Source: Hemiscyllium ocellatum (taxonomy: Eukaryota). From it: DNA of 64,000 bases. Positions 9,884 to 44,992 of this stretch are shown piece after piece. Below the pieces are notes generated by a model. The model was not told the origin of the DNA. It saw only the letters and a list, made by a program, of their open reading frames with translations, and did not search any database. The DNA is taken from the NCBI RefSeq assembly GCF_020745735.1, contig NW_026867509.1, positions 1,240,001 to 1,304,000 on the forward strand, in the 5' to 3' direction. A program made the position numbers and the translations under genes. Within the stretch, counting starts at the first letter, position 1. Every line of letters begins with the position of its first letter.

Positions 9884-12647
9884 AAGCACAGTGCAGCGAT
9901 TGGCCCAGTCTTTGCCATTTTGTATCCCATTCTCACTGTTATTGGTATACCTGGTGAGTCATGATATCATCAAGTTAATTACTGTTTTGAGATTCTCCAG
10001 TAATTTTGTCTCATCCTTTTCAGAATCTGACTCGTTTCCATTTTTGCTATTCAGTGCTGCTTAAATTTCACCTGACACAAACTATATTACACATAACGTG
10101 ATAATAAAACTTGCAAAGCATACAGTGGCAATTGTATTTGTGTTATGCGGCAAAATAATATATTATTCAAATTTGCTATACTCAACATTTAGAGAAACAC
10201 CTCTCATTTGATTTGTGAAATTCATGGCATTGCCTGAACATGAAAAATGGGCATTATCGAGCATTAGCATTTAATGAAATGCTATAAAATAAAATCTACC
10301 CTAATTAGTATTGTTCCAATTCGTAGTGTATTATAGTGCAATAAAGTATTGAGCACTAGCATTTAATAAAATGCTATAAAATAAAATCTACCTTAGTTAG
10401 TATTGTTCCAATTCGTAGTGTATTATAGTGTGATAAAGTATTGAGCACTTGCATTTAATAAAATGCTATAAAATAAAATCTACCTGAGTTAGCATTGTTC
10501 CATTTCGTAGTGTATTATAGTGTGATAAAGTGTGTCACCATCTTTGACAGCTGCATGTGAAAATGAATGACTACATTTATTTCATGAATTGTAACATGCA
10601 ATATTTTTGATTGGAAAATGATTTTCACACCTCTGGAATAATGCAATTCTTAGAGCATGTTATAGTATAGTGAACGCTGGTTGGGCATTCCCCCTCTTGT
10701 CGTGCTTTTAGGAATTACTTATGAAAACATGTGAAAGAGGCAAGTCAAGATGAACCATTTTGAACTTATTGTGTACTTTCTTTTGATTTGCTGGTAAGTA
10801 TTATACATTTGGTCTTTATTGTAGGAAAGCTACATGCATTTTAGTCTTTAGTAGAACAGGAATATCATTGTCACAGTGAACCTACCCTGTTTACCTAGAG
10901 AGTCCTGAAGCAGTAGCACATCAACTTCTGTTTCTGTCTTCACAGAAAACGTGGGTCCCCTAAGGTGTTCCAGCAGTTTCTGTTTGTATTAAAGTTCCTG
11001 TCTCTCATATTCGTCTCACAAATTGGAGTTGAGCTTCTGTCTTCAACCAGTCTCCTAAACTTAGTGATGCAACTTTACAGGAGATTGAACAAAAAATCCA
11101 AAACTAAATAACACAAGGAGGTATTATGGCAGATAATCAGAAAAATACACTCAAAGAGTTCATTTAGAAGGAACACTTTAAAGAAGGAATGGAAGACATG
11201 CACAGTGAAGGGGCAATGTTTGAACATTCACGCCATCACCATCTGAATTTACACTCGTACTGTTTGATTCATTGAGATTACTTATGTGCATCCAGTTCGG
11301 AATTGAGTTCAGATGCTCTCTCCGACATTAGTAGAATGCTACAGGATGAGAATGGTGAGATTATAGGAATACTTGAAAATTCGAAGAATAAACTCGAAAC
11401 AGCTGAGAGCTTTTCGGATAGAAATCCAAGGTAGGTCAGTGAGCATCAATTTGATAGGCTTGATATGAATAGGGGAAGGGGAGGAAATTTTACAGGTGAG
11501 TTGAATTGGATAGTTCGCCACGGGAGCTGACACGATACACAGAACACGGATCTGAATGGGTTAGTAGTGCTGATTGGAGTAAGTCTGTTCTCAACAAATA
11601 TTTACTGCAGAATTTGATCTCCTACAGCTCTCACTGATTGTGGGTAATCGGAGTATAGAGATGGCAAATTGATGGATCAGGATTGCACAAACAGCTGGAA
11701 GGGACTCCTTTTTGGCTGCAGTCAGTTACAGCTCCTTGTCTTTCTGTCTGTCACGGCCAGCTTAGTCATGATCACAATCCTATCCCGAGGTCAGTGCAAT
11801 CTCTCCTGATGCATTTACTTCTACCTGATGACAATCACGGTGTCTGATTTCCTTGTCACCCACACGGCCATCATCTTCTAACGCATTTTCAGCATTTATT
11901 TCCGATACAGTATCCTGTCTACCACCCCTGCCAGTGCGCTCAGTGCAGTGTTGATCTATGTAAGCCGGGATGGCTCAGTCTGCCTGATAGCAGCCTTCAC
12001 ATTCGACCGTTTAGTGGCTATCTGCTGGCAGAGCTTGAAGGCTAGATGCTGCATGGAGAAAACTGCATCGCTGGTCATAGGAACAGTATGTGTCATGAGC
12101 TGTATCAAACATTTTCTGTAATTTATTTGCCAACCATTATTCGTTGTGGATGGAGTCCCCTGGTTCTGTGACATTAAGTCCATCTATTACACCCTGCCTG
12201 CTTAGCAGGCCTACCACTGACTGGACCGCATTTTAACGCCCATTCTCCCATTCTTCCGCATTTACTTAACTCAATGTTTTGACTGAACGACACAGCTTAG
12301 CAGCCAGCAAAGCCCGCAGGAGGTTCCGCGGCACCACGTACAGTGGAGACAAGGAAATGGCCAACTGTAAGAGATCAATTATCCTGCTTTTCGCTATCCC
12401 TCTGAGTTTCCATCTCCTGTTGGTGACGTATGTGGAAAACTTCATCCATGTGCGGGTTATAGGTAAGGGCTTGAACTACAATTTAAATTTCAAAGATGCA
12501 TATTACATTCTCCAAGAGGTGAACATTGTGCTTACTTTATTCAGTTCCTCCATTTACGTGTTCACCTATGTCCTATCCCTGAACCAGTTTCGTGACGAAG
12601 TAAAGAAAATGTTTGTACGCCCTTTCGCTATCCTGATCTATCATTAA
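9884..12647 (+). pseudogene. GPR139/142-like class A GPCR pseudogene, two exons (9884-9953; ~11757-12647)
   Basis: Exon 1 is 70 nt, like the intact paralog, and reads (K)HSAAIGPVFAILYPILTVIGIP with a GTGAGT donor; the start codon position is AAG. The exon 2 acceptor is mutated (CGG). Exon 2 reads ASLVMITILSRGQCNLS*CIYFYL..FTFDRLVAIC..PWFC with several stops and a frameshift. Confidence 0.9.
10259..10533. repeat. Tandem repeat, 3 x 92 bp
   Basis: Unit starts GAGCA(T/C)TAGCATTTAAT recur at 10259, 10351 and 10443. Confidence 0.95.
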
Positions 12648-12814
12648 ACCATGAAATACAATAAAATCTTTCATATTCTCTCCCATCCCGAGTCTCTCAG
12701 TGTGTATAACTCTGTATCACAGGAACATAGCCATAACAGTCGGCCATTCATCATCCTGAGTATATCCCGTCATGCCTTACAAGGCTCTGGTCAGACTACA
12801 TTTGGGGTATTGTG

Positions 12815-13330: not shown

Positions 13331-13789
13331 TATGGTCTTATGGATACCGTGTCTGGTGGGTAGACCGATTCATGTTACCAGCTTTTGGATCATATCCTTT
13401 AAAATATTCACTGAAAAACAATTTATCTAACTCAAATTTAGCACTAACAACTGACCTGGAATCAACTACCATTTGCGAAGTATGTTTCAAAGCTTAACTA
13501 CCTGTTGTGCGTCTAAAAGATCCCTGACATCTCTCCTGAATGGTTTGACTCTCATTCCAATTGGTAGGAACACCAACCAGTTGGTGACCAACCTCAGGTC
13601 AACATCCACCAAAAGTAGTTTCATTGGTGTGCTTTGCGAATCATAAGTTGCACAGAATATGCAGCAAACTTTTCAATGAATGGTTTCACGAAGTCCACCA
13701 ATTCAGTGTCACATCAGTATTTTCAGAACTGACTGAAGGAGATGGATTCTGCTTTTAGTCTAATCCAGGTTTGACAGCCTGACAATATT

Positions 13790-14815
13790 AGGTTTCATTA
13801 GGTTTCCCAAGGTCGGCTACTGCACAAAATATGGAGGCATGTGAGTAGGGGTGAATTAGCAGTTTGGATCAGAAATTGGATAGCTGAAAGAAGACATTGG
13901 TTGGTGGTTCATGGGAAATATTCATCCTGGAGTCCAGTTACGAGTGGGGTCCACTGTTGTCATTTATATAAACGACTTGGATGAAGACATATAAGGATGG
14001 TTTAGTAAATTTGCGGATGACACTAATATCGGTGGAGTTGCAGATAGTGACGAAGAATATTGTAGGTTACAAAGAAGTGTGAGGTGTATCACTTTAGAAG
14101 GAGTGAAAGGAATGCATGAAATGGGCTAATGCTAAGATTCTTCGTGGTGTAGATGAGAACAGAGACATTGGTGTTCAAGTACCTAGATCCTTGAAAGTTT
14201 CCACTCAAGTTCATTGGGTTGTTAAGAAGGCGTACGGAGTGTTAGCTTTTTTTGGTGCAGGAATTGAGTTTCAGAAAAATGATATCATGTTGCCGCTGCA
14301 CAAAACTCTGTTGCAGCCACATTTAGAGTTTTCCTTACAGTTCGGGTCACCGCATATAGGAAGGATGTGAAAGCTTTGGAAAGGCATCAGACAGGATTGA
14401 CGAGGAAATTGCCTGTTATGGATGGAAAGGCTTGGGAGGAAACTGAGAGACTTGAGACTGTTTTCGTTCGGGTGAAGAAGTTTGAGAAGCGACTTAATGG
14501 AGGCTTATAAGATAATCACAGGATTATTTAATTTGTCAGTGAGATCCAATTTCCTCGACTGGCGATTGAATGTTGGTAGATTTAGATCAGATGTCAGAGA
14601 TATTTTCTTTACTCAGACAGTAGTCGGGACCGAGAACATACTGCCTGCAACACTAGTAGACTCATCAACTTTGAGGGTATTTAAATGGTCATTGGAAAGG
14701 CATATATACGAGAATGGAATAATGTAGGTTGGAAAGGCTTCAGATTGGTTCCACAGGTTGGCGCACTATCGAGGATAGGAAGGCCTGTACTGCACTGTAA
14801 TTTTCTATGATCTAT
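13790..14815 (+). mobile_element. Decayed CR1 3' fragment
   Basis: SKFADDT remnant (~14005), the KVSTQVHWVVKKAYGVL motif and a TTCTATG-type tail. Confidence 0.85.
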
Positions 14816-15026
14816 GTCGGTTTATTTCAGCAAGCCCATTCGAGTCTGGTAATCAATATTGTGGAAATTATCCAGATTCAGGTTTCCTTGACCTTTTTTT
14901 CGAAATGCTTCACTGATTTTTCTCCTTCATTCAAGAAATCGCAGCAAGACCTCCATTACAAAAAAAGTGTGCACCTCTTTTAAAGTAAATCCTCTGCGTG
15001 TATTTTGTCTGTGATCTTGTCTACAG

Positions 15027-15195
15027 TTCCCAGTACAATAGACAACATTTTATCAGAAGGGGATGGGGCGGCAGAAGTGCGTGCAGTTGGAACCCTGTTT
15101 TCTGCATTGTTGGATATTTCAAAACGTGAGGGGAATTTCACCATCGACGAGCTACGTCTGTCTGACAGCGCAGTGTATTACTGCGTGCTCAGAGA
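15027..15195 (+). other. 3' half of a TCR alpha/delta-type V segment (FR2 end to FR3), open frame, preceded by a splice acceptor
   Basis: TTTTGTCTGTGATCTTGTCTACAG acceptor, then (V)PSTIDNILSEGDGAAEVRAVGTLFSALLDISKREGNFTIDELRLSDSAVYYCVLRD. No C23 or W41 found upstream. Confidence 0.85.
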
Positions 15196-15234
15196 CACTG
15201 TGACAGAAACCAGAGGAAGTCTCGTACAAAAACA
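15196..15234 (+). other. 23-RSS of the half-V
   Basis: CACTGTG (15196-15202), exactly 23-nt spacer, ACAAAAACA (15226-15234). Confidence 0.95.
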
Positions 15235-16358: not shown

Positions 16359-16866
16359 CACATTAACGTCACGGTTAATTATATTCTTATAATATCCCGA
16401 ATATACCCCCCACCCCCTATTTACTTTGTTGTATTGTGGCTTCTTAGTTTTTAAAGTGTTAATGTTTAATGTAAGGAAGTGATCAATCAGGGTAATGTAA
16501 TTTTTAAGGATTTCTTGGGTTGCCCTCTGTACTGCCCGGAATTCAAATCGAAATATATTTGATATATTTATTGTCAACACAGTGTATATGGTCAGGATTA
16601 TTGTCATATCAGTTGCAGATTTTATTTAGTCAATGAACAGAAGTAGTTCATTCCCACAGAGTCCCAAATAACCAACAACAAATTCGGTACTCACACGGCC
16701 AGTATAAATACTTGAATCGGGATTTGTTGTGCAGCATGTTAAATGCTGTTTATGTGATTGTCCTCCAGAAGTTTCCCTTCATATCAATGTTCTGAAGTGC
16801 CAGTATCTAACACGTTCTTATGAATAGCTCTCAACAGGCAGCAGCTGTGACCCAGAAACCTGCAGC

Positions 16867-17184
16867 AGTTATTACACGTGGCTCTTGCTCAGACGCTTCA
16901 CTGTAAGACGCATTGCTCAGTAATTGACGGTAGTGTCAGATGCCAAAAGCTCAGAGAGAGTTAATTCGTACTACTAGTAAAACTGTTGGATAGCATCAGA
17001 AAACCAGATCTGAGCGAAACCCACCTTCACTTCAGCACGAATGGACAGAGAACTCCGGCAGTCTGACGGTACCAGAGTAAGTAATAACCATAGCCAGTGT
17101 GGTTGCAGCTTAAAGTGGCATTTCCTCCCTCTGTCTGTGCGAGTGAGGACACTCGCTGTATCACAGAAACTCCATTGCTGAAAT
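16867..17184 (-). pseudogene. Inverted TCR alpha/delta V pseudogene with degenerate 23-RSS
   Basis: Minus strand: tgtcag acceptor, then FSNGVSVIQRVSSLAQTEGGNATLSCNHTGYGYYLLWYRQTAG, a frameshift, and YELTLSELLASDTTVNY*AMRL. RSS is TACAGTG (16905-16899), 23 nt, GTAATAACT (16875-16867). Confidence 0.88.
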
Positions 17185-21869: not shown

Positions 21870-22000
21870 CAAGAGAAAACGAGGACGGCAGATGCTGGAG
21901 CACCAGAGTTGAAAAATGTGATGCTGGAAAAACTCAGCAGGTCAGGCAGCATCTGAGGAGCCGGAGAATCGACGTTTCGAACATAAGCCCTTCGTCTGAA
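21870..22000 (-). mobile_element. Penelope-type 3' repeat fragment
   Basis: Reverse complement of the 24220-24309 tail; hammerhead core mutated (CAGACGA). Confidence 0.8.
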
Positions 22001-23150
22001 TGGGGAGGTTCCTGTTGAGGTATGCACTGGATTGAATGCGTCCATTCAGGTTGACCTTTAGCCATGATGGCTGTACGGGTCACTACAACGATGAGGTATG
22101 GGTTTCCTCCCCAAGCAGGCAACCTTACACACCGAACATCTGGTCCCTTTGAGTTCTAGCAAAACTTGGTTGGAGACAATACAGGGACGGGTATGCCAGA
22201 TCTTGGTAACGTACAGAAATCACAGGTGAGTTCCCGACTGAAGAGCATAAAAAAATATAAATGGTGTGCTCCCTCGATAGTCAAACGAAGCTATGAGTGA
22301 CCCATGTGGGACAAGTTTATATTCCTTCTTTGGTCCTGCATATTTCAACGGATTAGTTGTGTAATTGTACATATTAGGGCAAATAGGGTTCCAGAAACAC
22401 CCCCTTGCTGGTGGGCCCTTTCAATTTGCTACAATTTAATTTCACAGAATTCACTCCAGTACAAGGTGATGAATATTGTCTAATAATGGTATACGCATTT
22501 AATAAATGAATGAGAACCATCCCAATGACTGAGACTAATGCCACAACAGTGCTAGACAAGATTGAAATATTTGCATAAGTAATCTAATACTCTTCAAAGT
22601 TTACTTTCACGGGGGACGCGGGGAAGGGAGGGAACCCATACCTCGTCCTTGTAGTGACCCGCACAGCCGTCATGGCAAAGGTCAACCTGAATGGACGCAT
22701 GCAATCCAGTGCATATCTCAAGAGGAACATTCACCACTGCATTCAGAAGCTAAGAGATTTCACAATCGGACAGACATCAGTAAAGTTATTCTATCATCTT
22801 CTCGTTATTGGAGAATGTTACCAACCCTACAAATGTTGACAGTTAAAATGTCTCAATTCTAGCATTATTTCTATAAATTGCCATCTCGTTTTGGTTTATG
22901 CCCCTTTATTGTTCATCAAAGGAAGTGGTGGTAAGTGTGCATGTTGGGACAGCCCAAGTCCAGAAGTGGCACAAGGTAGCTGCTTGTCAACGTTATTTGC
23001 ATAGATATGGCAGTAAAACAATCTTTTATCCATAGGGGCAGAAGTAACTTTCTAAGTTCAGAATTGAACAATTCCCTAAGTGAGGACAATGGTAGTTTTG
23101 AGGAAAATATTATTCCAGGGTAACAGAATGAACAAAGATTGTTTAAAAGT

Positions 23151-24309
23151 TGACTACACCTCCTCCCACCCTGCCCCCTGTAAAAACGCCATCCCACATT
23201 CCCAATTCCTTCGTCTCCGCCGCATCTGCTCCCAGGAGGACCAATTCCAACACCGCACAGCCCAGATGGCCTCCTTCTTCAAGGACCGCAGATTCCCCCC
23301 AGACGTGATCGACGATGCCCTCCACCGCATCTCCTCCACTTCCCGCTCCTCCGCCCTTGAGCCCCGCTCCTCCAACCGCCACCAAGACAGAACCCCACTG
23401 GTTCTCACCTACCACCCCACCAACCTGCGCATACAACGTATTATCCGCCGCCATTTCCGCCACCTCCAAACGGACCCCACCACCAAGGATATATTTCCCT
23501 CCCCTCCCCTATCAGCGTTCCGCAAGGACCACTCCCTTCGTGACTCCCTTGTCAGATCCACACCCCCCACCAACCCAACCTCCACCCCCGGCACCTTCCC
23601 CTGCAACCGCAGGAAATGTAAAACTTGCGCCCACACCTCCACACTCACTTCCCTCCAAGGCCCCAAGGGATCCTTCCATATCCGCCACAAGTTCACCTGT
23701 ACCTCCACACACATCATCTATTGCATCCGCTGCACCCGATGTGGCCTCCTCTATATTGGTGAGACAGGCCGCTTACTTGCGGAATGCTTCAGAGAACACC
23801 TCTGGGCCGCCCGAACCAACCAACCCAATCACCCCGTGGCTCAACACTTTAACTCCCCCTCCCACTCCACCGAGGACATGCAGGTCCTTGGACTCCTCCA
23901 CCGGCAGAACACAACTACACGACGGCTGGAGGAGGAGCGCCTCATCTTCCGCCTGGGAACCCTCCAACCACAAGGTATGAATTCAGATTTCTCCAGCTTC
24001 CTCATTTCCCCTCCCCCCACCTTGTCTCAGTCGGTTCCCTCAACTCAGCACCGCCCTCCTAACCTGCAATCCTCTTCCTGACCTCTCCGCCCCCACCCCA
24101 CTCCGGCCTAACACCCTCACCTTGACCTCCTTCCACCTATCCCACCTCCATCGCCCCTCCCCCTAGTCCCTCCTCCCTACCTTTTATCTCAGCCTGCTTG
24201 GCTCTCTCTCTCTTATTCCTGATGAAGGGCTTATGCTCGAAACGTCGAATTCTCTATTCCTGAGATGCTGCCTAACCTGCTGTGCTTTGACCAGCAACAC
24301 ATTTGCAGC
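23151..24309 (+). mobile_element. Young 5'-truncated Penelope-like element (RT C-terminus + GIY-YIG endonuclease + 3' repeat)
   Basis: Stop-free frame to 24081 with IIYCIRCTRCGLLYIGETGR..FREH (GIY-YIG with CxxC); flanked by a TAAAAGT duplication (23144-23150, 24310-24316). Confidence 0.95.
24215..24250 (+). ncRNA. Minimal type I hammerhead ribozyme in the Penelope 3' repeat
   Basis: Stem I ATTC/GAAT; core CTGATGA plus an extra A; stem II GGGC-TTAT-GCTC; GAAAC-GTC cleavage triplet with a loopless stem III. Confidence 0.75.
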
Positions 24310-28379: not shown

Positions 28380-28452
28380 ACGATCTATGGGCATACCGAT
28401 GATCCTTTCTCTGTTATCTTGTACCTGATTCTCCTAGTAATTGGTATTCCTG
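28380..28452 (+). pseudogene. Orphan exon 1 of a third GPR139/142-like paralog
   Basis: Reads ACG (dead ATG, same AAG-ATG context as the intact gene) ..FSVILYLILLVIGIP+G; donor mutated to GGGAGG; no exon 2 recognised downstream. Confidence 0.65.
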
Positions 28453-29890: not shown

Positions 29891-30396
29891 GAAAACATTC
29901 TTTTGAAGAATTACGATTAAATGCCACGTACTGAACAAGGGAGAAAGTCATTGAGGATATAATCTCAAAAGAATAAGTCTTCCGCAGTTAAATGCACAAA
30001 AAAAATTGATAGACTTTGGATTGAAGTAATGCAGAAGAGAGCACAATTAGACGAGCACAGGTATGGAGGAATTTGTAGAAGGATACTGGGACGGCATTGG
30101 TGAGATGTTCACTCTGTCAAATTCACAAAATTCATTCTCAAACTCTCTCACTATCTCTCAGGCACACATTCTCTCTGTTACCATAAGCACATGGATGATG
30201 ATGCGATAGTGTAGGGGGACGGGCTGAGAATAGTTCACAGGTCGGCGCAACATCGAGGTCTTAAGGGTCTGTTCTGCCCTGTATTGTCCAATGTTCTATG
30301 TTCTCATCTCACTTGCACACACTCTCTCACTCATATTCAAACACCTAGTCAAACTCAGTCTAACACAAACTCTCACTTATACATATTCTATCTATT

Positions 30397-30706
30397 GGGC
30401 GGCACGGTGGCACAGTGGTTAGCACTGCTGCCTCACAGCGCCAGGGACCTGGGTTCAATTCCCGCCTCAGGCGACTGACTGTGTGGAGTTTGCACGTTCT
30501 CCCCGTGTCTGCGTGGGTTTCCTCCGGGTGCTCCGGTTTCCTCCCACAGTCCAAAGATGTGCGGGTCAGGTGAATTGGCCATGCTAAATTGCCCGTAGTG
30601 TTAAGTAAGGGGTATATGTAGGGGTATGGGTGGGTTGTGCTTCGGCGGGTCGGTGTGGACTTGTTGGGCCGAAGGGCCTGTTTCCACACTGTAAGTAATC
30701 TAATCT
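30397..30706 (+). mobile_element. HE1-type V-SINE, full length
   Basis: GGGCGGCACGGTGGCACAGTGGTTAGCACTGCTGCCTCACAGCGCC head with B box GGTTCAATTCC, V-domain core, CR1-like tail ending GTAAGTAATCTAATCT. Confidence 0.95.
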
Positions 30707-33102
30707 GTCATTTGCAATCACGCACTTTCCCACATTATCAATCACCTATTTTCAAACTCAATGGCAAATTCTCCCACACACACATATGATAGTGAGCTCG
30801 ATATTGACAAATAATAATCCAAAACTGAGTGGCGAAAAGATAAATATTCTTTGGGAAAAGTTAGAGGTTGCGGACGGCAAGGGGTGACATGTTCCTTCAC
30901 TCAGAGATCTACACACCATTCACACTTACTCACCACTGTTACACTCACACGTTCTGCCAGTCACACCCGCACACTAGCATAGTCTCATGCACATACGCAT
31001 GCATGTGCTATTGTTTTGCACCCTCTCTCATTTGCTAATGCACACTGTCAATCATGCATGCACATTCTTCGTCTGACCCTCAGACATAAACTTGCTTATT
31101 GTTATGATCATACGTGCGACTGTTTTGAAGAATAATCGTCATGTCCCACTTTCCAGAATAGCATGAAATTTTGCATGAAGATTCTTCGGAGTGGGCGTGG
31201 CATAAAGACAGCACTTATTTTAAAGAAATTCATTGTGATTTGCAATGAGCTGTTTGACAGAGAGCTGAGGCAGTTGTACTCTTATTTTCAACGGAGTCTT
31301 AGATGGGCTTGGAATGTGAACATTTGCAAGACATTGTGAGCCAAGCAGGAGAGTGGGATTTACGGCATGATTTCCTTCTCAAGCGGTGCATTTCTGATTC
31401 CAGAATTTCTTCTTCCTGTGACCAGAAGATACTGATGCGACTTGAGATCCCGGAAAACTGCATTTCATAGAAAGAAACATGATACCAATGATTAAATGAA
31501 GAAAATTGACGTCTGTGTGTGACTATCTGCATCTTTAAGTATTTGCAAATAGTTGTCAATCTGTGCTTAGCCCTCCATTTTTCCATCTGTGTTTAACCCT
31601 CACGATCTATCTCTTTTTGTATCTATCTGTGCGCATGTGTGCATGCGTCTGTGTTTCTCTCTATGTGTGTCTCTGTGCTTCTGTGTAACTTCAAAGAAAG
31701 ACATTTTGTCAATAGTTTCCATGAGTTAAAAGGTGTCAAACCTTCTTTTATCTTCAGCATGTTTGTAAAGAGATATAATGCCACCCCACTCCAGATGACT
31801 CGACACCGGAGCAAAAGTGGATTCAGACTGAAGGGAGACAAAAATACACAATATCATGCAAACTGACAGCCGCAAAATTTCCCATTGACGTTCAGTTTGG
31901 AGATATCTTTTGGTGACAAGAACTTCAAAATTTGTTAGTATGTCTGTCCCAGTTGGGTTTCAATGTACGTGTAAGATTCAGGGGAAATTGTGAAATTGAG
32001 CCATTCAGAGTTCCTGTGCAGTAATGGTTGCTCGAAATCCTGAAGCATTGTCGTTGGCTCATTGTTGGTGTCAGACCAAATATTACCCACTGATTGCCAG
32101 GAAATGTCCCCATGTCTGATGGTGAATGCCTGCGTGGGCGTTTACATGATGCCAAGGTAACCACCCACTCGTTCCATTTCATCACATGAAACGTCTCCAC
32201 AGTTCTGAAGAAGAGTCATATTTGATTGATAAACGTAACTGGTTCTCTCTCGACAGATACTGCCAGATCAACTGAGATGGTACTGTACTTCTTGCTTCTC
32301 CACGTTTTGCTTTTCTTGAAGTGCCTGCTGCGTTCGGGATTTTGCCTTTATCCTCACAATAACATACGGATAGTTGTGACGATACATCGCCTTTAACGAG
32401 GTTATGTTCTCCTTTTTCAAGAGGGATCAGAGAGGCAGTGGTGCTAATTTGTCTGAAAATGCTTAATTTGAACAATGGCAAAAGAAAAGCCAGATCTCCC
32501 TATTCAGTTATTTTTTTCTACTTCGTTTCTTTCGGTAAGCAGTCAGAAAACTGCTGTTAGCAGAGAAGAAGCTACAGTGAAAAGAGGTTCTATGCTACCA
32601 CAGAGGTGTCTTTCCTGACCTTTACATCTGAAACCTGTAAGGTCCTACGTAAGGACCAGCTGCATCACTCCTAGAATATCCACTCTACATCTGCTCAAGC
32701 AAAACTAATACGTTTCGGTCAGTGCTACATTACCTCCTTTTTCAAATGGTCTAAACCAAGATGAGTTCCGAGGTATTCGCTGAGGAAATATGGCACCATT
32801 CATGGGGATAAGCCTACAGATATCTCAGTTCACTGCTCTGCTAATTTGAACGAAACCAAGAAAACAGTTCCTTCAGAATTCAACAAAGCTTAGATCTCTG
32901 ACTTTGCAATGCATTACTGCTCGCTGAGATGAACATTAAAACAAGAATGCAGTTAATCCTGACAAAACATTCGTAAGGCATTCTCACCTTCTATCACCGA
33001 AAAAGATCAAGACCTGGATGGTAAATTGACAAAGAGCGGAGTCTCTTATTATTTTAGCTGAATGACGTTCTTGCTTACTGTGTTTGCTGGGTCATTTCAT
33101 GT

Positions 33103-35950
33103 GGACCCGGAAGCTGGTGTCGCGCTAGCTTACTTGGGAAGGTTTTTTTTTATAAAAGCGTGCAGCTCCAAGCCTTCGGCCTCACTCTCTCGGCGGAGAA
33201 GGTAACGGCTGTCTGGAGGTGTTTTTTTAAAGTTGCGGTATAGTCCAGTTATTGTTTTTTTTTAACGGCTAAAATTTTAATTTTTTTTAAGCGCCTAGCG
33301 GACCCAGAAGCTGGTGTCGCGCTAGCTTACCTGGGAAGGTTTTTCTTTTCATATGAAAGCGCGCAGGCTGAGGTTAGAGATAGGAAAGGTGAGGTCACCC
33401 TGTTTGGAGTTTTCTACAGGCCTCCTAATAGTCTGACAGAAGTAGAGGAAAGTATTGCGAGGATGATTCAGGGGAAGAGTGGAAGTAGCAGAGTGGTTGT
33501 TATGGGGGACTTTAACTTCCCAGATATTGACTGGGAAAGCTATAGCTCGAGTTCGTTAGATGGGTCGGTGTTTGTCCAATGTGTGCAGGAGGGTTTCCTG
33601 ACACAATATGTAGACAGGCCAACAAGAGGTGATGCTATACTGGATTTGGTTCTAGGTTATGAACCAGGTCAGGTGATAGACTTGGAGGTAGGTGAGCACT
33701 TCGGGGACAGTGACCACAACTCGGTGACTTTTACTCTAGTGATGGAGAGGGATAAATGTGCACTGCAGGGCAAGAGTTATAGCTGGGAGCAGGGAAATTA
33801 TGATGCGGTGAGGCATGGCTTAGGATGCGTGGATTGGAAAAATAGGCTTCAAGGGAAGAACACAAATGATACATGGAGATTGTTCAAGGAACAGCTACTA
33901 GGTGTCCTTGATAAGTATGTGCCAGTCAGGCAGGGAGTAAAGGGTCTTGTGAGGGAGCCGTGGTTTAATAAGGAATTGGAATCCTTTGTGAAAGGGAAGA
34001 TGGCGGCCTATGTAAAGATGAGGTGTGAAGGTTCAGTTGGGGCGATTGAGAGTTATAAGGTAGCCAGGAAGGATCTAAAGAGAGAGCTAAGAGCAGCGAG
34101 AAGGGGACATAAGTTGGTAGGATTAGGGAAAACCCAAAGGCTTTCTATAGGTATGTCAGGAATAAAAGGATGACTAGGGTAGGTATCGGTCTAGTCAAGG
34201 ATAGTAGTGGGAAGTTGTGCGTGGAGGCGGAGGAGATTGGAGAGACACTAAATCAATACTTTTCGTCAGTATTCACTCAGGAACAGGACACTGTTGCTGA
34301 TGTGAATATTGAGTCACAAGTGAAATTAGAATGGATGGCCTTGATTAGAATGGATGGCCTTGGGGTATGTAGGGAAGAGGTCTGGGGAATACTGGAAAGG
34401 ATGAAAATAGATAAGCCCCCTGGACCTGATGGCATTTATCCTAGGATCCTCTGGGAAGCTAGGGAGGAGACAGCGGAGCCATGGGCCTTGATTTTTATGT
34501 CGTCGATGTCTACGGGAATAGTGCCAGAAGACTGCAGGATAGCGAATGTGGTCCCCTTGTTCAAGAAGGGGAATAGGGATAGCCCTAGTAACCCTAGGCC
34601 AGTGAGTCTCACTTCTGTTGTGGGCAAAGTCTTAGACAGAATTGTAAGGGATAGGATTTATGAACATCTGGATAGGAATACTGTGATCAAGGATAGTCAG
34701 CATGGTTTTGTGAAGGGCAGGTCGTGCCTCACAAACCTTATTGAGTTCTTTGAGAAGGTGACCAAGGAAGTGGACCAAGGTAAAGCAGTTGTTGTGGTGT
34801 ATATGGATTTTAGCAAGGCATTCGATAAAGTATCCCATGACAGGCTGATGCAAAAACTACGGAGGTATGGCATTGAAGGTGCATTAGAGGTTTGGATTTG
34901 GAATTGGCTGGCTGGAAGGAGACAGAGGGTAGTAGTTGATGGTATAGGTTCATCTTGGAGTGCAGTTACTAGCGGTGTTCCACAAGGATCTGTTTTGGGA
35001 CCATTGCTGTTTGTCATTTTTATAAATGACCTAGAGGAGGGGCTTGAAGTCTGGGTGAGCAAGTTTGCGGATGACAAGAAAGTCGGTGGAGTTGTGGACA
35101 GCGAAGAAGGATGTGGCAGGTTACAGCGGGGTAGATAAGTTGCAGAGCTGTGCAGAAAGGTGGCAAATGGAGTTCAATGTAGGTAAGAGTGAAGTCATTC
35201 ACTTTGGTATGAGTAACAAGTAGATGGATTACTGGGCTAATGGTAGGCTACTTGGTAGTGTGGATGAGCAGAGGGATCTTGGTGTCCATGTACACAGATC
35301 TCTGAAAGTTGCCACCCAGGTAAATAGTGCTGTGAAGAAGGCATATGGTGTACTGGGCTTTATTGGTAGAGGAATTGAGTTCCGCAGTCCTGTGGTCATG
35401 TTGCAGTTGTATAAGACTCTGGTGCGGCCTCATCTGGAGTATTGTGTGCAGTTTTGGTCGCATTACCAAAGGAAGGATGTGGAGGCACTGGAACGGGTGC
35501 AGAGGAGGTTTACCAGGTTGTTGACTGGCATGGTAGGAAGATCGTATGAGGAAAAGCTGAGGCACTTGGGGCTGTTCTCATTGGAGAAAAGAAGGATTAG
35601 GGGAGATTTGATAGAGGTGTACAAGATGGTTAGGGGTTTAGATAGGGTTGACAGTGAGAACCTTTTTCCGCTAATGGAGCCAGCTGTTACTAGAGGACAC
35701 AGCTTTAAATTAAGGGGTGTTAGTTATAGGACAGATGTTAGCTGTAGATTCTTTACTCAGCGGGTTGTGAGTTCTTGGAATGCCCTGCCAGTAGCAGTGG
35801 TGGACTCTCCCTCTTTATGGTCATTTAAGCGGGCATTGGATAGGCATATGGAGGTTATTGGGCTAGTGTAAGTTAGGTAGGCTTCGGTCGGCGCAACATC
35901 AAGGGCCGAAGGGCCTGTACTGCGCTGTATTTTTCTATGTTCTATGTTCT
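33103..35950 (+). mobile_element. CR1 LINE, relatively young; duplicated 5'UTR motif joined directly to ORF2 (APE + RT), frameshifted
   Basis: ORFs 33463-34173 (GDFNFP, SDHN), 34170-35138 ([25 protein letters not shown]) and 35224-35871; (TTCTATG)n tail. Confidence 0.97.
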
Positions 35951-37369: not shown

Positions 37370-39650
37370 GAATGGTACCAGATAATGAGCTCGGCCATGT
37401 AATAGATTTGGAGTTAGGTGCGTACTTTGGTGATAGTAACCACAATTTCATTATGTTTACTCTTGTGATGGAAAGGGATAGACGTATACTGCAGAGCAAG
37501 AGTTGAGCTGGGGAAAGGTAATTAAGATGCGATTAGGCAAGGTTCAGTAGGAATAGGATCGGGAAGGAAACTACAGTGAATGGACACAGTTGAAATTTGG
37601 AGTCGTTCAAGGAACTGGAACTTCATGTCCTCGATAAGCATGTATCTATCAGGCAGGGAGGAAGTGGTCCATCAAGGTCGCCATGATTTACTAAAGACGC
37701 TGAATCTCTTGTCAAGACAAAGCAAGCTTTTGTTAGGATTGGACGTGAAGGCTCAGTTAGAGCGCCCGAGTGTTACAGGTTAGTCAGGAATAACCCAAAG
37801 AGAGAACGAAGATGCGCTTGGTGGTGACATCTGAATTCGTTGGCAGATATGATCAATGAAAACCGTAAAACATCGAATGGTTTATCAGGAATGGAAGGAG
37901 GACAAGAGTAATATTAGGGCCAATCAAGGCTGGGAGAGGGGCGTTTTGCATGGGGTCCAAAGAGGTAGGGGAAGCGCTAAATGGATATTTTTCGTCAGTA
38001 TTCACGTTGGAAAACGACAACGTTGTCGAGTCGAATACTGAAATACAGACTACTAGACTAAATGGGATTGAAGATCAGAAAGAGGAGGTGTTAGCAATTC
38101 TGGAGAGGTCAAAAATAAATAAATTCCCTGGGCCAGATGGGATTTATCCCAGGATTCCCTGGATGGATATTTCAGAGCCTTTGGCTTTGGCCTTTAGGTT
38201 CTTATTATTTGCAGGAGTCGTGGCAGAAGACTGCAGGATAGCAAGTGTTGTCCCCTTGTTAAAGAATGAGAGAAGAGATAATTATAGACCAATGACCCCT
38301 CTTTATATTGTTGGTAAATTATTGGAATGGATTATAAAATATATCTTTACAGTCATCTTGAAAGGAAGAAGTTGCTAAGAGATAATCAACCCCGTCTTGA
38401 GAAGGATAGAACTTGACTCACAAAGCTTATTGAGTTCTTTGAGAAGGTGACCGAATAGGTGGATGAGAATAAAGTGCTTGATGTGTGGTATGTCAATTTC
38501 AGTAAGGCGTTTGATAAGGTTCCACGCGGTTGGCTCTTGCACAAAATCCGGAGGAATGGGATTCAGGTTCATTTAGCCGTTTGGTCAGAAATTGGCTAGC
38601 TGAAAGAAGACAGAGGGAGTTGATCGATGGGAAATGGTCATCTGGAGTACGGTTAACAGTCATGCAATGGAACTATTTGTCCTGGCCAACTGCTGTTTGT
38701 CAGTTTTAAAAATGACCTGGATGAGTGCATAGAAATATGTGTTAGTAAATTTGCAGATGACACGAACGTCGATGGGGTTGTGGATAGTGTTGAAGGATGT
38801 TGAAGGGTACAAAGAGACATAGATAAGCGGCAGAGCTGGACTGAGAGGTGGCTAATTGTGTTTAATGTGGAAAAGTGAGAATTGATTTATTTTAGAAGGA
38901 TCAACAGTCATAATGAGAACTGTGCTCACAGAAAGATAATTGGTAGTGTAGATGAGCAGAGAGATCTCGGTGTCTATGTGCATAGAACCCTGAAAGTTAC
39001 CACCAAAGTTGATAGGGTTGTTACAATATATGGTGTGGTGCTTTCATTGGCAGAGGGATTGAGCGTTCGAGTCATGAGGTCTTGCAGCAGCTGTGCAAAA
39101 CCCTGATGCGGCTGCACTTGGAGCATTGCGGATGATTCTGGTCACCACAGTTTCGGAAGGATGTGGATGCTTTAGAAGGGGTTCAGAGGAGATTAACTGA
39201 GATGTTGCCTGATATGGAGAAAAAGGCTGATTATAAAAGGCTGAGGGACTTGAGGTTCTTCTCCTTAAAGTGAAAAAGTTTGAGCGGTTATATAATCGAG
39301 TCCAAATCTGCGGGTGCAATACCGTGCACGATGAGAGCCTCTTTCCTCAGATGATGATGGCTACGACGGGGAACAGCTTTAAGTTGAGTGTTGGTAGGTA
39401 TAGGGAGATGTCGGAGGTAATTTCTTTATCCAGTGAGTAGTATTGTTGTAGAAAACTCTACCTGCAACGGTGATAGACTCGCCAAATTTAGGGGCATTCA
39501 AATAGCCATGGATAAACCTATGGATGAAAATGGAATAGCATATGTTAGGTGGGTTTCAGATAGTTTCCACAGCTTGGCTCAACATCGAGGGCCGAAGGGA
39601 CTGTACTGTGCTGCAACGATCTCTATTCTATGTTCTATGAAATATCCTTG
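37370..39650 (+). mobile_element. Decayed CR1 LINE (APE end to 3' tail)
   Basis: Collinear degenerate homology with 33700-35950. Confidence 0.9.
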
Positions 39651-39990: not shown

Positions 39991-40237
39991 CCATAATACA
40001 TCGAGATGGAACTCACCTACCATTCCCTGAGAAAAAGAACAGGAAGTGACTTCACCTCAGGACATGGCATCACAACATTATCTCCATCTGAGGCAGCTGA
40101 ATAATCATCTGCACAAATAACATTTCATGCATGTAAATGATTGAAACAACTAATTAAGTCCCAAGAGCAAGATAGCAGCAATAAATACGCTTACATCTTC
40201 AATGAATTGTGGCGTGCACTCAGGAACTCTGAGAAAG

Positions 40238-43200
40238 ATGCACGGAATACCGAGAGGTGTGATCTTTGCAATTTACTATCCTGCCATTGCAATAATTGGG
40301 GTTCCAGGTAAAGTTTTGATTTCTCGTCAGTGACAGTGAAAGGATGATGCTATCTTTCTAAGTGAGGACAGTGCATAGCTTTGAGGTTAACATCAGGTGC
40401 TGGAATGTCCATGCATCTCTTTCCCCTTTGCCTCCTGATGGCTGTATTTGTGGGTTTGGAAGGTGTTATCCAAGGACTGCTGGTGAATTTCTGCAATGCC
40501 ATGTTTCGATGGTGCGAACTTTTGTCCATGAATTTCGACGGACTGTTTTCTCGAGGATATGATATTAAGAAAGCAATATGGTTCTTTCTGGGTGGTTTTG
40601 ACGTTAGATGTTTTTGTCAGATTTGTACTCATCCATTCTTGTGGTGAGTATCTTATCACATGCACGAATTAAGTATACGAGAAAGTGGACAACTTTTGGG
40701 GATCCGGCGGTGAATTACTCGCTGCAGTATTCTCAGTTGCTGATTAGCATTTGTAGCCATAGGCTTTATATGGTGAATTCAATTAATTTTCTGAAGGATG
40801 GTATTCGCGATAAAATTGATATTGCTGAATTTTAATGCCACGCAACATTCATCAGCAAGAGTTAAAGCTTCTGTTGATCGAGTTAGTCATTGTCTACCAG
40901 GCTTGTGAGGTGCGAATGCTGTTTGTGTTAGATTGAAACCAAAATATGCTTATTTGGTCTGCTTGAGCACGTGGTAAATTGCCAATTGAAAGGTAATGAG
41001 TAATTATAAGCAATTGTAACAATTCACACATTTCGATGAAGGGAATGCCATTTCTAAAGCCGCTAAACATGTTTGAACTCAGGATAATACGCAGACAAAC
41101 ATCTGTAGATAATTCCAGAGATCATGTGAATATCTTTTATCTTCCTTTGTGCGAATATGATTCCAACCAGGGTTGAGTTTTTTCTCAATGCATATTGATG
41201 CAAATGTGGCACAGTTCCACGCGGAAACATTTCGACCATTAAAAATTTAATGACAAGGGCCGTCATTCGCACCTCAACACTAGATCTTATTTTTTAACCA
41301 AGTGCTAAATAAGGCCAGGAGCTGGCTTGGGCCTGATGTAAATCAAACTGGGCATCAGAAGGATGGTTGGAACTAACAGATTCATTTTAATTGTGCTGTT
41401 GGTCACATTTTCTATAACTTATTGAGTGATTGAGACGAGATGGAGAAATTGTTCAGTTTGGATTTGTACTGCTTGTTGCGTACAGAACAGACCTGGGCAG
41501 CTTTCCTCATTCCGGGTTGCATGCCAGTGCTGTATTTCTGTTGGAATATCTTATCTTGTGGTGGCATTTTCTGGAATACAAATGTCCACGGGTATTGGAA
41601 TTTTGGCAGTCTCTGGTATCTTCTGTGGTTTCTGAAATCTCATTGACCAAATAGAATTCTGGGAACGTTCTAACTCGTCCTGCTTAAATCTGATCTATTG
41701 GTTGCGGGATCAATTATCTCTATCTGTCACTTCCTGCCTGTTTGGCACGTAGGTAGTTCCTTATTTGATTTTCAACTCCACAAGGACTGCCCTATGGTGT
41801 GCAAAACAGCAAAATGTCCTCTTCGACTGTTACCACTTGTTTGTTTTACCAAGTTACTGGCATTTTGATGTTCAACATTACATATCTTTATTAATTTTGC
41901 AGTTCTCTATATTTATAATGAAATGTCTTAGATTTGTCAATGCAATTTTGTTCATATACCATCATTGTTCCATTACATTTTTCACTCATGTTAACCCTTC
42001 ACGCCTGTAATGTTTTGCTAAAGCACGAAACATTTGATTTGAATTAGTTATGTATTTCTGCCAAGTTATGTCACCATCGCATTGCATCATTGTAGCACAA
42101 TGTCTTATTGACATTGCTAAAACTCGTTTAATTGTTAGACTAGCATTATATTGTGATAATACAGCCAGAGAATAGTTCAATGATGTTTCTCTCAAGTGGA
42201 CTGCGCGCAAATTAACAAAAAATATAATGGCAAAATTGTACTCTTATTGTGCATCAATAATGCACATATGTTAAATTGCCAAGCACCCATCATTTTGTTA
42301 ATGACTTTCTAATAAGTCACTCACTCTGATAACCGGCTTGTATTTTCAAATTTTGATCGCTGTGTATATGTAGAATTATTGTGAGAGTCGGCAGTGGAAT
42401 AACACTCAAAACATATTCAGGTATTGAAAAACTTCAGTCACTGATCAAACATGACTGATTATATTTGATTCATTTATTAAACTCTGAGTTTACTGTTAAC
42501 CACAGGTAATATTAAACACTGAGTTTTCGAAAATGCATCAGCATTTCTCAGCTGACAAAGAATGGATGCTTGCAGTATTTCCAAGTTGATAAGGCACAGT
42601 GTATTTTTCCCCTCTTTTCAATCACTCTATCTCCATTTCCACATCGACTGTTACTGATTCTTCAAAAATATGTCTGATTATCACCAGATATGCTGTTTCA
42701 AAAACTTGTTTATCCCATATCTACAACTCCTCCCATACCTACTATATCCTGTATCTTGCTGTTGTTACCAGAACAGCACACAGTACTCCAGCTATGACCC
42801 AACCAAAATTCAGGACAATGCCCTTATAATCTATGCCATGAGTAATAAAGTTCGATCTGTTCAGCACCTTTTTCTTCTAAATATATAATTTAGGGTAAGA
42901 CAGATCATTTGCCCAATGTCGCACTGAACCATGAAGGAGTTATTGCATTGGAGAAATGCATCCTCCAAATGTAACAACTCCATACGTTAATTCCAATAGT
43001 GTTGCAAAGCACCAAACAGTCTCGTTGATTACTAGTTGCTGATGTCGCATTTGCCACTGAGTTCCTTCCATGAAGTTGGAGAAAGACGATATTTCTCTCT
43101 TCTACGTCTCTCTTTGGGGATTTTGTTTTTCAGAAAAATGCAATTTGAAGCATTTCCATCTTCAGTCAGGGATACTGAGTTAGGGATAGGGATATCCATA

Positions 43201-44992
43201 ATCTGCTCCGACTGAGTTTTCTAAAATCACACAATAACCTTCTGGAAATTGAATTAAAGGAAGTTGTTCTTCTTGCCCTTTGTAAGCCTTTCTTCTCAAT
43301 TTAAGAAAACTCCCCCACCTTAATGATTTCTAAATTATTAAATGTTCTTTTGTTGTTCGGAATGTGTATCCAATTTTCTTTAGTAATTGTTTGAGCAATC
43401 CAGTTCTCTAGCAAAGTTATCTTCTTAATGCAGGTAATTATGATGAAGACTACTTTGCATAATCATTCAACAGTTGAAAATGTGTTGCTGGAAAAGCGCA
43501 GCAGGTCAGGCAGCATCCAAGGAACAGTAGAATCGACGTCAGGGGCATAAGCCCTTCTTCAGGAAAGGGCTAATGCCCGAAACGTCCGAAACGTCGATTC
43601 TCCTGTTCCTTGGATGCTGCCTGACCTGCTGGGCTTTTCCAGCAACATATTTTCAGCTCTGATCTCCAGCATCTGCAGACCTCACTTTCTTCTCGATAAT
43701 CATTCAACAACCTTTCTTTTACGAAGTCACAATTTACATCGAACAATGGTGCATTATATCTTTAAATCTAAAGGTGTTATGTTCAACGATATGCAAGTCA
43801 GGTGGGTTGACCACTCTCAATTACTCACAGTGTTGGTTAGGTGCATTAGCTTTGGGTAATACATGATTACAAGGAGAGGATACAAGAATGGTACTGGGTC
43901 AGGTGTTCTTTGGTGTTTCATTCTGGACCCATTGGGCCTGATGTCTGTTTGTAAGCTGTAGGGGTGCTTGATTTTAGTTTGATGTGTATAAATATGAAAC
44001 AAAATCCAGCAAAATTAAACGACTCTGTTCAGAATCACACCAGTATCATTTTAATCTTGTGATGTTCTCTGTCTATTACAGCTAACTTGGCAGTGATTGT
44101 GATCCTGTCTCGAAAAGGATGTGGTCTGTCCCGTTGCATAATATATTACCTGGTGTCCATGGCAGTAACCGATCTCCTCGTCATGATCACTGCAGTAATA
44201 TTAAACCGGATTGCTGGACTTTATTTCCCACTTAGTGTCCTGTCTATCACACCAGTGTGCAGTTTTCGCTCTGCCTTAAATTTTGCTGCCATTGACAGTT
44301 CTGCCTGGTTTACTGTTGCCTTCACATTTGATCGGTTTATAGCCATTTCTTGCCAGAAGTTGAAAGCAATTTATTGCACCGAAAAGGTGGCAGCAAGAGT
44401 CATAATAATCATCTCTACACTGACCTGTGTAAAAAATATCTTTATGTATTTTATGTTCGAACCTAAGTACATAATTGACAATATTCCCTGGTTTTGTGCC
44501 ATAAAAGAAATATATTATACATCACCTGCATGGACTGCATATGATTGGATTCGTTCTATTTTAACGCCTTTCCTTCCATTCATGTTCATTTTGCTCCTCA
44601 ACGCCCTTACTGTCAGGCACATCATAATAGCAAACAGAGCTCGCAAAAGACTCCGAGTTCAAGGCAATGAACAAAGTCAATGTGACCCAGAGATGAAAAA
44701 GCGAAGAAAGTCCATGGTATTACTCTTTGCCATTTCAGGCAGTTTTATCCTTTTATACTCGTTGTATTTTTCAACCATCCTCTATGTCCGAATTTCACAT
44801 GTAACGTACTCCTCTGGTTCTGATTTTATTAATTCCACGTTTATTCTTCAAGAAACTGGAATGATGCTTCAGTTATTCAGTTCATGCATCAATCCGTTCA
44901 TTTATACAGGAACGCAGGCTAAATTCAGAGCTGAGTTAAAGGATGGTCTGAAATATACAATCTATCCATTTGTTAAAAAATTTCAGCAGTGA
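40238..44992 (+). CDS. Intact two-exon class A GPCR, GPR139/142-like (exon 1 40238-40307, exon 2 44082-44992; 326 aa, or 338 aa from the in-frame ATG at 40202)
   Basis: Exon 1 MHGIPRGVIFAIYYPAIAIIGVP+G with GTAAAG donor splices in phase 1 to the TTACAG acceptor, giving ANLAVIVILSR. Seven hydrophobic helices, TM2 AVTD, TM3 FDRF, ECL2 PWFC, TM7 NPFIY; no stops. Confidence 0.92.
43473..43695. mobile_element. Head-to-head Penelope 3'-repeat insertion forming an inverted repeat, with 14-bp TSD
   Basis: Arms ~43473-43563 and ~43565-43660 are reverse complements; ATAATCATTCAACA at 43459-43472 and 43696-43709. Confidence 0.9.

What the first reader, a model, noticed from the sequence alone, without database searches (positions are those of the whole stretch)
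9884..44992. A birth-and-death GPCR cluster interleaved with rearranging TCR V segments
Seen: three same-strand paralogous first exons (9884, 28380, 40238) with the same ~70-nt TM1-encoding structure. Two have lost the ATG (AAG, ACG); one gene is intact. V segments with RSSs lie between them and downstream. Known: non-immune gene families sit inside some antigen-receptor loci (trypsinogens in mammalian TRB, olfactory receptors at the 5' end of TRA/TRD). Inference: these receptors were co-duplicated with the V array. Deletional joining of a + strand V upstream, such as the one at 15027, would excise the intact GPCR in T cells, so receptor expression could depend on rearrangement state.
Basis: partly seen in the sequence, partly recalled or inferred. 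Interest (0 to 1): 0.7.

Follow-up and report, generated by a model that had tools for sequence, protein, structure and literature searches.

The report
Orphan receptor genes inside shark TCR array
In this stretch of the epaulette shark's T-cell-receptor V-gene region, one working and three dead copies of a large shark-specific orphan receptor family sit between mostly dead V gene pieces, much as trypsinogen or smell-receptor genes sit in mammalian T-cell-receptor loci, and nothing found here links the receptors to T-cell function.

Summary
There are four same-strand first exons of a two-exon class-A GPCR family, not three. Gene C (40238-40307 + 44082-44992) is intact. Gene A (9884-9953 + 11761-12647) lacks its ATG and has at least 5 stops and a frameshift.

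The GPCRs belong to a family of more than 1000 proteins in sharks, labelled "GPR139" by NCBI. The family is only distantly related to GPR139, which ties with TRHR in the structure search.

Co-duplication with V segments is not visible in this window. Excision by V(D)J deletion follows from the layout only if D-J-C lies downstream. No RNA data could be found, so any dependence of expression on rearrangement is untested.

This scan has already noted the same GPCR/TCR interleaving in 27 notes on other DNA of this genome. Verdict: real, a passive neighbourhood like trypsinogens in TRB, of moderate interest.

The parts
9884..9953 (+). GPCR copy A, exon 1 (dead: AAG in place of ATG; GT donor kept)
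   Evidence: (exon-1 HMM E 1.4e-7)
11761..12647 (+). GPCR copy A, exon 2 pseudogene: at least 5 in-frame stops, +1 frameshift near 12268, NPxxY and TM3 Cys lost
   Evidence: 39 of 59 conserved family positions kept
15027..15234 (+). Half V (CDR2-FR3 only, ...LSDSAVYYCVLRD) plus near-consensus 23-RSS (heptamer 15196-15202, nonamer 15226-15234); an old LINE tail lies upstream
   Evidence: (V-set E 0.0013)
16865..17177 (-). Dead conventional V segment (FR1-CDR1-FR2 readable, then frameshift; Cys codon now TGA; heptamer TACAGTG, nonamer decayed)
28380..28452 (+). GPCR copy B, orphan exon 1 relic (no in-frame ATG, donor lost, 73 nt); paralogue of A; no exon 2 found
   Evidence: (z = 16)
32650..32970 (+). 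Dead V segment (FR3 ...ISDFAMHYCSLR with in-frame TAG; heptamer lost, nonamer-like ACAAAACAT); start approximate
40238..40307 (+). GPCR gene C, exon 1 (ATG, 23 codons + 1 nt, donor CCAG|GTAAAG)
   Evidence: (E 7.6e-12)
44082..44992 (+). GPCR gene C, exon 2 (TM1 end to stop; DRF, NPFIY; intact)
   Evidence: 7tm_1 6.9e-19; 78 of 82 conserved positions kept; no variants in 4 DNA runs
54671..54808 (.). Assembly gap (138 N) between gene C and copy D / the NAR-TcR cassette; not filled
56824..56892 (+). GPCR copy D, orphan exon 1 relic (ATG changed to ATA, 1-nt deletion, donor G|GTGAGT kept); paralogue of C; no exon 2 found before the window's end
   Evidence: E 1.1e-5; z = 14
62286..63611 (+). Germline NAR-TcR cassette: leader 62286-62328, V exon 62478-62762, 23-RSS from 62763, 12-RSS/D (63156-63172)/12-RSS at 63128-63200, 23-RSS 63521-63559, J 63560-63611 with splice donor
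   Evidence: (V-set 6.3e-9)

Best explanation
The window is an internal piece of the epaulette shark TRA/TRD-type V array. A large, cartilaginous-fish-expanded family of two-exon orphan class-A GPCRs (NCBI label 'probable GPR139') has members lodged in it. Four copies are present, all on the plus strand. One is an intact, constrained gene (C); the others are a full-length pseudogene (A) and two dead orphan first exons (B, D). They alternate with three dead conventional V segments and one intact-looking NAR-TcR V-D-J cassette. The most likely relation is passive. Both gene kinds live in a region prone to tandem duplication, transposon insertion and decay, so GPCR copies are born and die there alongside V segments. 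Trypsinogen genes in TRB and olfactory-receptor genes at TRA/TRD are in the same situation. Gene C is most likely a self-contained gene with its own promoter, expressed outside T cells. T cells that join a same-orientation upstream V to downstream D/J would lose it on that chromosome, without consequence. Shown: the gene structures, the dead or intact status of each copy, family membership and the interleaving. Inferred: passive hitch-hiking, expression outside T cells and the lack of consequence.
For: Anatomy and status of the four GPCR copies. The family is huge and dispersed: 1044 proteins at E below 1e-5, on many chromosome-size contigs in Heterodontus, Rhincodon, Stegostoma and Scyliorhinus. 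Gene C is constrained. It keeps 78 of 82 positions that are at least 95% conserved in the family. It differs by at least 26% from every database relative yet remains open; neutral substitution alone leaves it open in 1.5-10% of simulations. There are 0 variants in 981 coding nt against 14 SNVs in about 4.2 kb of intron and flank, across four DNA runs from three samples. V relics and the NAR-TcR cassette. Copies A, B, C and the three V relics lie on N-free sequence, and independent DNA contigs cover 40027-43498 and 43671-45290. Precedents: 5, 8 and 20 trypsinogen genes inside cattle, human and mouse TRB, duplicated there (PMC2685407); OR10G3 as the 5' border gene of TRA/TRD (PMC7824213). Unchecked scan notes report the same interleaving 308-508 kb before and 432-495 kb beyond this window on the same piece.
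Against: There is no expression data for gene C in any tissue, so T-cell expression is not excluded. 27 of 66 scan notes on this GPCR family also mention TCR. If that held up in a proper count, the association would be stronger than chance, though it could still be purely genomic. Gene C has no exact or near-identical match in the protein collection (best 74%), so it appears unannotated, without a visible 1:1 orthologue, and its long-term retention is inferred rather than shown. Linkage to TRAC/TRDC was not verified.
Confidence: 0.72

Rival explanations
1. Block co-duplication: GPCR and V were copied together as [GPCR - V] units, so the GPCR copies here are by-products of V-array expansion.
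For: All four GPCR copies, two of three V relics and the NAR cassette are on the plus strand. A exon 1 to the half V is about 5.1 kb and B exon 1 to the dead V at 32.7-32.9 kb is about 4.3-4.5 kb, and A and B are DNA paralogues. Unchecked scan notes report block duplications carrying both gene kinds elsewhere in this genome.
Against: Self-blastn of the window shows only transposon families. A~B homology is about 280 bp and C~D about 100 bp, with no colinear flanks. The half V and the 32-kb dead V share only a 33-nt FR3 end, as any two V segments would (z 4.8; other V pairs z about 0). A and C are only 46% identical as protein, so any shared duplication is very old.
Confidence: 0.3
2. Functional coupling: the receptor is expressed in the T lineage, and V(D)J deletion or locus opening sets which cells can express it.
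For: The topology allows it. A plus-strand V with a 23-RSS (15196) or any same-orientation V further upstream, joined to downstream 12-RSS partners, would excise 15.2-63 kb including gene C. Gene C is intact and constrained.
Against: No RNA evidence of any kind. The named V is half a V. The position and orientation of D-J-C relative to this window are unknown, and a scan note describes minus-strand V segments 308 kb upstream, which would join by inversion and delete nothing. Most copies here are dead. The family is dispersed over many chromosomes. Mammalian precedents (trypsinogens, ORs) show no such coupling.
Confidence: 0.05
3. Assembly artefact or orphan V array: the GPCRs and V elements are not truly adjacent, or the array is not part of the functional TRA/TRD locus.
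For: A 138-N gap (54671-54808) separates gene C from copy D and the NAR-TcR cassette. All conventional V segments in the window are dead. Linkage to the constant regions was not checked. Scan notes place similar arrays on other pieces.
Against: Copies A, B, C and three V relics lie on one N-free stretch of 54.6 kb. Contigs from four DNA runs (three samples) reproduce 40.0-45.4 kb apart from a high-copy SINE. The NAR-TcR cassette looks intact. Scan notes place V and NAR-TcR elements from -734 kb to +647 kb on the same piece.
Confidence: 0.07

Closest known systems
Trypsinogen genes inside the mammalian TRB locus
   Same: A non-immune multigene family lies between V segments and the D-J-C clusters of a TCR locus. 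It is duplicated to different extents in different species (5 in cattle, 8 in human, 20 in mouse; PMC2685407) and is physically removed by deletional V(D)J joining in T cells, with no known consequence.
   Different: Here the family is a GPCR, the locus is TRA/TRD-type with NAR-TcR cassettes, and the copies are scattered deep among V segments rather than in two blocks. Most copies in this window are dead. Conservation across species was not testable.
Olfactory receptor genes at the 5' end of mammalian TRA/TRD (OR10G3 as the IMGT 5' borne)
   Same: Class-A GPCR genes of a large birth-and-death family lie next to the same TCR locus (PMC7824213). From memory, a few ORs also lie between the first human TRAV genes.
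   Different: OR10G3 lies outside the array (24-51 kb upstream of the first V), whereas these shark genes lie inside it. The shark family is not an OR family, and its best structural relatives by sequence are GPR139 and TRHR.
Human GPR139 (and GPR142)
   Same: Rhodopsin-class receptor with a very short N-terminus. GPR139 is the top hit of the family profile among solved structures (7.3e-15, 58.3 bits). NCBI names many members 'probable GPR139'.
   Different: TRHR scores practically the same (57.2 bits). The single sequence gives only E about 5e-5 to GPR139. The family has more than 1000 members in sharks against one or two genes in mammals. Ligand and tissue are unknown.
NAR-TcR doubly rearranging cassettes of sharks (Criscitiello et al. 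2006, from memory)
   Same: The cassette at 62286-63611 has leader, NAR-type V, D and J with 23 / 12-12 / 23 signals.
   Different: It is context for this finding, not its subject. It was followed up separately in this scan.

Membership tests
Class A (rhodopsin-like) GPCR, Pfam 7tm_1 | Match to PF00001 above the gathering score | tested here: met
   Exon 2 of gene C: 68.8 bits against a cut-off of 30.5, E 6.9e-19, covering profile positions 4-260 of 260
Class A (rhodopsin-like) GPCR, Pfam 7tm_1 | D/ERY-type motif after TM3, NPxxY in TM7, TM3/ECL2 cysteine pair | tested here: met
   Gene C has FDRF, NPFIY, and Cys in ...TPVCSF... and ...PWFCAI..., all in columns invariant across the family. Copy A has lost NPxxY and the TM3 Cys.
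Cartilaginous-fish expanded two-exon 'GPR139-like' family | Exon 1 of 23 codons + 1 nt (MHG.P.G..FAIYYP...IG.P), phase-1 intron, exon 2 starting (A)NLAVI... | tested here: met
   The predicted junction 40307^44082 reproduces the N-termini of full-length family proteins such as P0001, P0005 and P0008. The joined protein itself was not submitted to any tool.
Cartilaginous-fish expanded two-exon 'GPR139-like' family | High similarity to family members and retention of family-conserved residues | tested here: met
   63-74% identity to the 120 best shark proteins, E down to 1.8e-139. 78 of 82 positions conserved at 95% or more are kept.
GPR139 proper (orthologue of human GPR139) | GPR139 clearly closer than any other receptor | tested here: not met
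   Family profile: GPR139 58.3 bits, TRHR 57.2 bits, PrRP receptor 48 bits. Single sequence: TRHR 3.3e-5, GPR139 4.8e-5.
TRA/TRD V array | V segments followed by 23-RSS; delta-specific NAR-TcR V-D-J cassette | tested here: met
   23-RSS at 15196-15234 behind a V FR3. NAR cassette with V-23, 12-D-12 and 23-J. All three conventional V segments are non-functional.
TRA/TRD V array | Physical linkage, and known orientation, to D-J-C of TRD/TRA | not testable with these tools
   Only the 64-kb window is readable. Scan notes place V elements from -734 kb to +647 kb on the same piece, but none names the constant regions.
Non-immune gene family embedded in an antigen-receptor locus (trypsinogen/TRB type) | Non-immune genes lie between V elements on contiguous sequence | tested here: met
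   Order on N-free sequence: A, half V, dead V(-), B, dead V, C
Non-immune gene family embedded in an antigen-receptor locus (trypsinogen/TRB type) | Neighbourhood conserved in related species | not testable with these tools
The search with the NAR V gave one 90-aa fragment on an 824-bp contig. One unchecked scan note says whale and zebra sharks share such a neighbourhood.

The most novel reading that the evidence does not exclude
The shark-expanded orphan GPCRs inside the TRA/TRD V array are expressed in lymphocytes. Because deletional V(D)J joining removes every gene between the chosen V and D/J, each T-cell clone would keep a different subset of them, giving a receptor repertoire tied to V usage.
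Probability: 0.04. Interest if true: 0.85.

Novelty: new variant of a known kind. Interest (0 to 1): 0.35.

Why it matters
If the neighbourhood is passive, it is another example, in the oldest jawed-vertebrate lineage, of an antigen-receptor V array acting as a duplication-prone nursery for an unrelated gene family. The GPCR family itself is very large, and I found it described in no paper. That helps explain how the family grew, and it warns annotators that intact genes hide among V pseudogenes: gene C has no match above 74% in the protein collection. If the receptors turned out to be lymphocyte-expressed, somatic DNA deletion would become a new way of diversifying a non-antigen receptor. Nothing here supports that yet.

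Tried and rejected
- Chromosome-level linkage through proteins similar to the NAR-TcR V: one short ENA fragment only.
Laying them showed all four are DNA, with even depth across the intron and no 40307^44082 joint. Two possible RNA runs hold none of the words.
- Fused V-GPCR gene models in other sharks as a proxy for adjacency: the N-terminal extensions of the long models are transposon-like or unrelated, and none is V-like.
- An exon 2 for B or D: a family HMM against all six frames finds none.
- A first half for the half V, upstream or displaced by the LINE: none found. I considered and rejected the idea that the minus-strand V at 17 kb is its inverted first half, because that V has its own decayed CDR2-FR3 and RSS relic.
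- Literature: no paper links GPR139-like genes with sharks or describes GPCRs in shark TCR loci. The supplements of PMC12227049 are not held.
- Rfam and tRNA scans of the window: nothing.
Each exon was used by reference.
Full report
**What the window is.** The 64-kb window is 40% G+C with one 138-N gap at 54671-54808. It also places TCR V elements just before the window (14 kb) and just beyond it (2.8 kb), plus a separately followed-up NAR-TcR cassette at its 3' end.

**The receptor copies.**
- **Search method.** tblastn with the intact gene, then an HMM built from 71 full-length family proteins run against all six reading frames, finds four copies. All are on the plus strand.
- **Gene C is intact.** Exon 1 is 40238-40307 (ATG, 23 codons + 1 nt, donor CCAG|GTAAAG). 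Exon 2 is 44082-44992 (acceptor TTACAG|CT).
  - The junction reads ...IIGVP|ANLAVIVILS. Full-length shark proteins read the same across that point, so the 40307^44082 splice model is supported by homology.
  - I did not build or search the joined protein. Each exon was used by reference.
- **Copy A is dead.** Exon 1 is 9884-9953, with AAG where the ATG should be and the donor intact. Exon 2 is 11761-12647, with at least five in-frame stops and a +1 frameshift near 12268.
- **Copy B (28380-28452) is a dead orphan first exon.**
  - It is one codon longer than the family norm, has no in-frame ATG and has lost its GT donor.
  - As protein it is not significant (E 0.72).
  - Its DNA aligns to A over about 280 bp, from 180 bp upstream of the start into the intron (z = 16 against shuffles; blastn E 1.5e-11). 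It is therefore a genuine relic.
The exon-1 HMM gives E 1.1e-5. It is a DNA paralogue of C (z = 14), with ATG changed to ATA, a 1-nt deletion in codon 5 and the donor kept.
- **No exon 2 for B or D.** None is detectable for either in the window.
- **Two pairs, not a repeating block.** A pairs with B and C pairs with D. A and C are only 46% identical as protein. So each full-length copy has its own orphan first exon 17-18 kb downstream. This is not a duplicated two-gene block.

**What family the receptors belong to.**
- Exon 2 of C matches Pfam 7tm_1 at 6.9e-19.
- The word-based protein search returns 1044 proteins at E below 1e-5. The best 120 listed all come from shark species apart from one unnamed metagenome fragment.
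- Most carry the NCBI name "probable G-protein coupled receptor 139". They lie on many chromosome-size contigs, several of them in Heterodontus alone.
- The best match is 74% (Stegostoma). The best matches from the epaulette shark itself are 67-69%. The gene therefore appears to be absent from the public protein set.
- In a tree of the 120 best hits, C falls in a moderately supported clade (0.84) of 12 sequences counting C itself. The other 11 are carpet-shark and catshark paralogues, and there is no clear 1:1 partner.
- Against solved structures the single sequence gives TRHR 3.3e-5 and GPR139 4.8e-5. A 33-sequence family profile gives GPR139 58.3 bits and TRHR 57.2 bits.
- This is therefore a distinct, expanded class-A family that is only distantly akin to GPR139. 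I found no paper describing it.

**Whether gene C is functional.** Three lines of evidence point to purifying selection.
- It keeps 78 of the 82 covered positions (of 84 family columns conserved at 95% or more), and the four changes are conservative. Copy A keeps 39 of 59 and has lost NPxxY and the TM3 cysteine.
- Random substitution up to 13% or 26% amino-acid change leaves exon 2 open in 10% or 1.5% of simulations, ignoring indels.
- Four public runs from three samples hold the gene. In them, the 981 coding bases show no variant, against 14 SNVs and several indels in about 4.2 kb of intron and flanks. About 3.3 coding variants would be expected, so this point is weak on its own.

None of this says where the gene is expressed.

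**The V elements.**
- **Half V at 15027.**
  - The RSS scan and motif scans find a CDR2-FR3 piece (...LSDSAVYYCVLRD) at 15027-15195. It is followed by CACTGTG-23-ACAAAAACA (Pfam V-set E 0.0013).
  - Upstream of it lies an old LINE tail, and no FR1-FR2 can be found.
- **Dead V on the minus strand, 17177-16906 (not listed in the finding).**
  - FR1-CDR1-FR2 reads ...GGNATLSCNHTGYGYYLLWYRQ.
  - After that come a frameshift, the conserved Cys codon changed to TGA, and a decayed RSS.
- **Dead V on the plus strand, ending near 32929 (not listed in the finding).** It carries an in-frame TAG and has lost its heptamer.
- **NAR-TcR cassette at the 3' end.** It has leader, V, 23-RSS, a 17-nt D between two 12-RSSs, then a 23-RSS and a J reading GPGTVVTVTA with a splice donor.

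The order along the window is A, half V, dead V(-), B, dead V, C, [gap], D, NAR-TcR V-D-J. "Interleaved" is therefore correct. "Rearranging" applies only to the NAR cassette and, at most, to the RSS of the half V.

**Co-duplication.**
- Self-comparison of the window shows only LINE and SINE families (LINE endonuclease and RT domains confirmed).
- Sensitive pairwise blastn of 10-kb neighbourhoods finds A~B and C~D homology only around exon 1. The flanks are not colinear.
- The half V and the 32-kb dead V share a 33-nt FR3 end and nothing else.
- In favour of an ancient [GPCR-V] unit there is only the shared orientation and the similar A-to-V and B-to-V spacing.
- I rate block co-duplication in this window at about 0.3. 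Unchecked scan notes claim clearer cases elsewhere in the genome.

**Excision and expression.**
- A plus-strand V with a 23-RSS, joined to a downstream plus-strand 12-RSS partner, deletes what lies between them. That is standard 12/23 logic and would remove gene C.
- The argument has three weaknesses:
  - It needs D-J-C downstream of the window, which I could not establish.
  - The named V is non-functional.
  - A scan note describes minus-strand V segments 308 kb upstream. Those would join by inversion and keep the DNA.
- Use of the local NAR cassette would not touch gene C.
- The consequence matters only if the receptor is made in T cells.
Laying them showed even depth across the intron and no splice joint, so they are DNA.
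  - The two possible RNA runs hold none of the gene's words.
  - Expression is therefore untested.

**Comparison with what is known.**
- Trypsinogen genes lie inside TRB and have duplicated there to 5, 8 and 20 copies in cattle, human and mouse (PMC2685407).
- OR10G3 is the conserved 5' border gene of TRA/TRD (PMC7824213).
- The shark case is the same kind of arrangement with a different family, and the copies lie deeper inside the array.
- The Sci Adv 2025 paper on elasmobranch TCR alpha/delta linkage does not mention GPCRs in its main text.

**Relation to the rest of the scan.** The same interleaving has already been noted many times in this genome. 27 notes hold both "GPR139" and "TCR", among them four on the same piece at -508, -308, +432 and +495 kb. 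I treated these as leads only.

**Limits.**

**Verdict.** Co-duplication and rearrangement-dependent expression are not shown. This is a new variant of a known kind of arrangement, of moderate interest.

Noticed in passing
window 56824-56892: A fourth dead first exon of the GPCR family (copy D), paralogous to gene C and 5.4 kb upstream of the NAR-TcR leader. No exon 2 lies before the window's end.
   Followed up: yes
window 16865-17177 (minus strand) and about 32650-32970 (plus strand): Two dead conventional TCR V segments not listed in the finding. One has its Cys codon mutated to TGA plus a frameshift. The other has an in-frame TAG and a lost heptamer.
   Followed up: yes
window 9704-9883 vs 28201-28379: The A~B similarity extends about 180 bp upstream of the start codon, at about 60% identity. 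This may be a shared promoter or 5' UTR of this GPCR subfamily.
   Followed up: partly
window 33463-35871 and 37373-39637: Two copies of a LINE (apurinic-type endonuclease plus reverse transcriptase, Pfam confirmed), about 67% alike. They lie between copy B and gene C, and further fragments sit at 13792-14817 just upstream of the half V.
   Followed up: partly
window 23080-24081: A 333-aa ORF whose tail has a GIY-YIG-like motif (…IIYCIRCTRCGLLYIGETGR…), reminiscent of Penelope-like retroelements. Pfam gave no hit at 1e-3.
   Followed up: partly
window 43472-43690 (also 1884-1972, 21907-21996, 24216-24310): A very high-copy SINE-like repeat in the intron of gene C. Summed contig depth there is 10^5-10^6 in the DNA runs, against about 25 elsewhere.
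   Followed up: no
window 48338-48550 and 47067-48767: A 109-bp unit that resembles a tRNA (GGTTCAAATC… T-arm-like end), repeated twice, inside a larger repeat of about 720 bp at about 87% identity. ARAGORN and Rfam call nothing there.
   Followed up: partly
window 10255-10531: A 92-bp tandem repeat, three copies at 94% identity, in the intron of pseudogene A.
   Followed up: no
window 30377-30706 vs 54236-54559: A 330-bp repeat pair at 89% identity. The second copy ends about 110 bp before the assembly gap.
   Followed up: no
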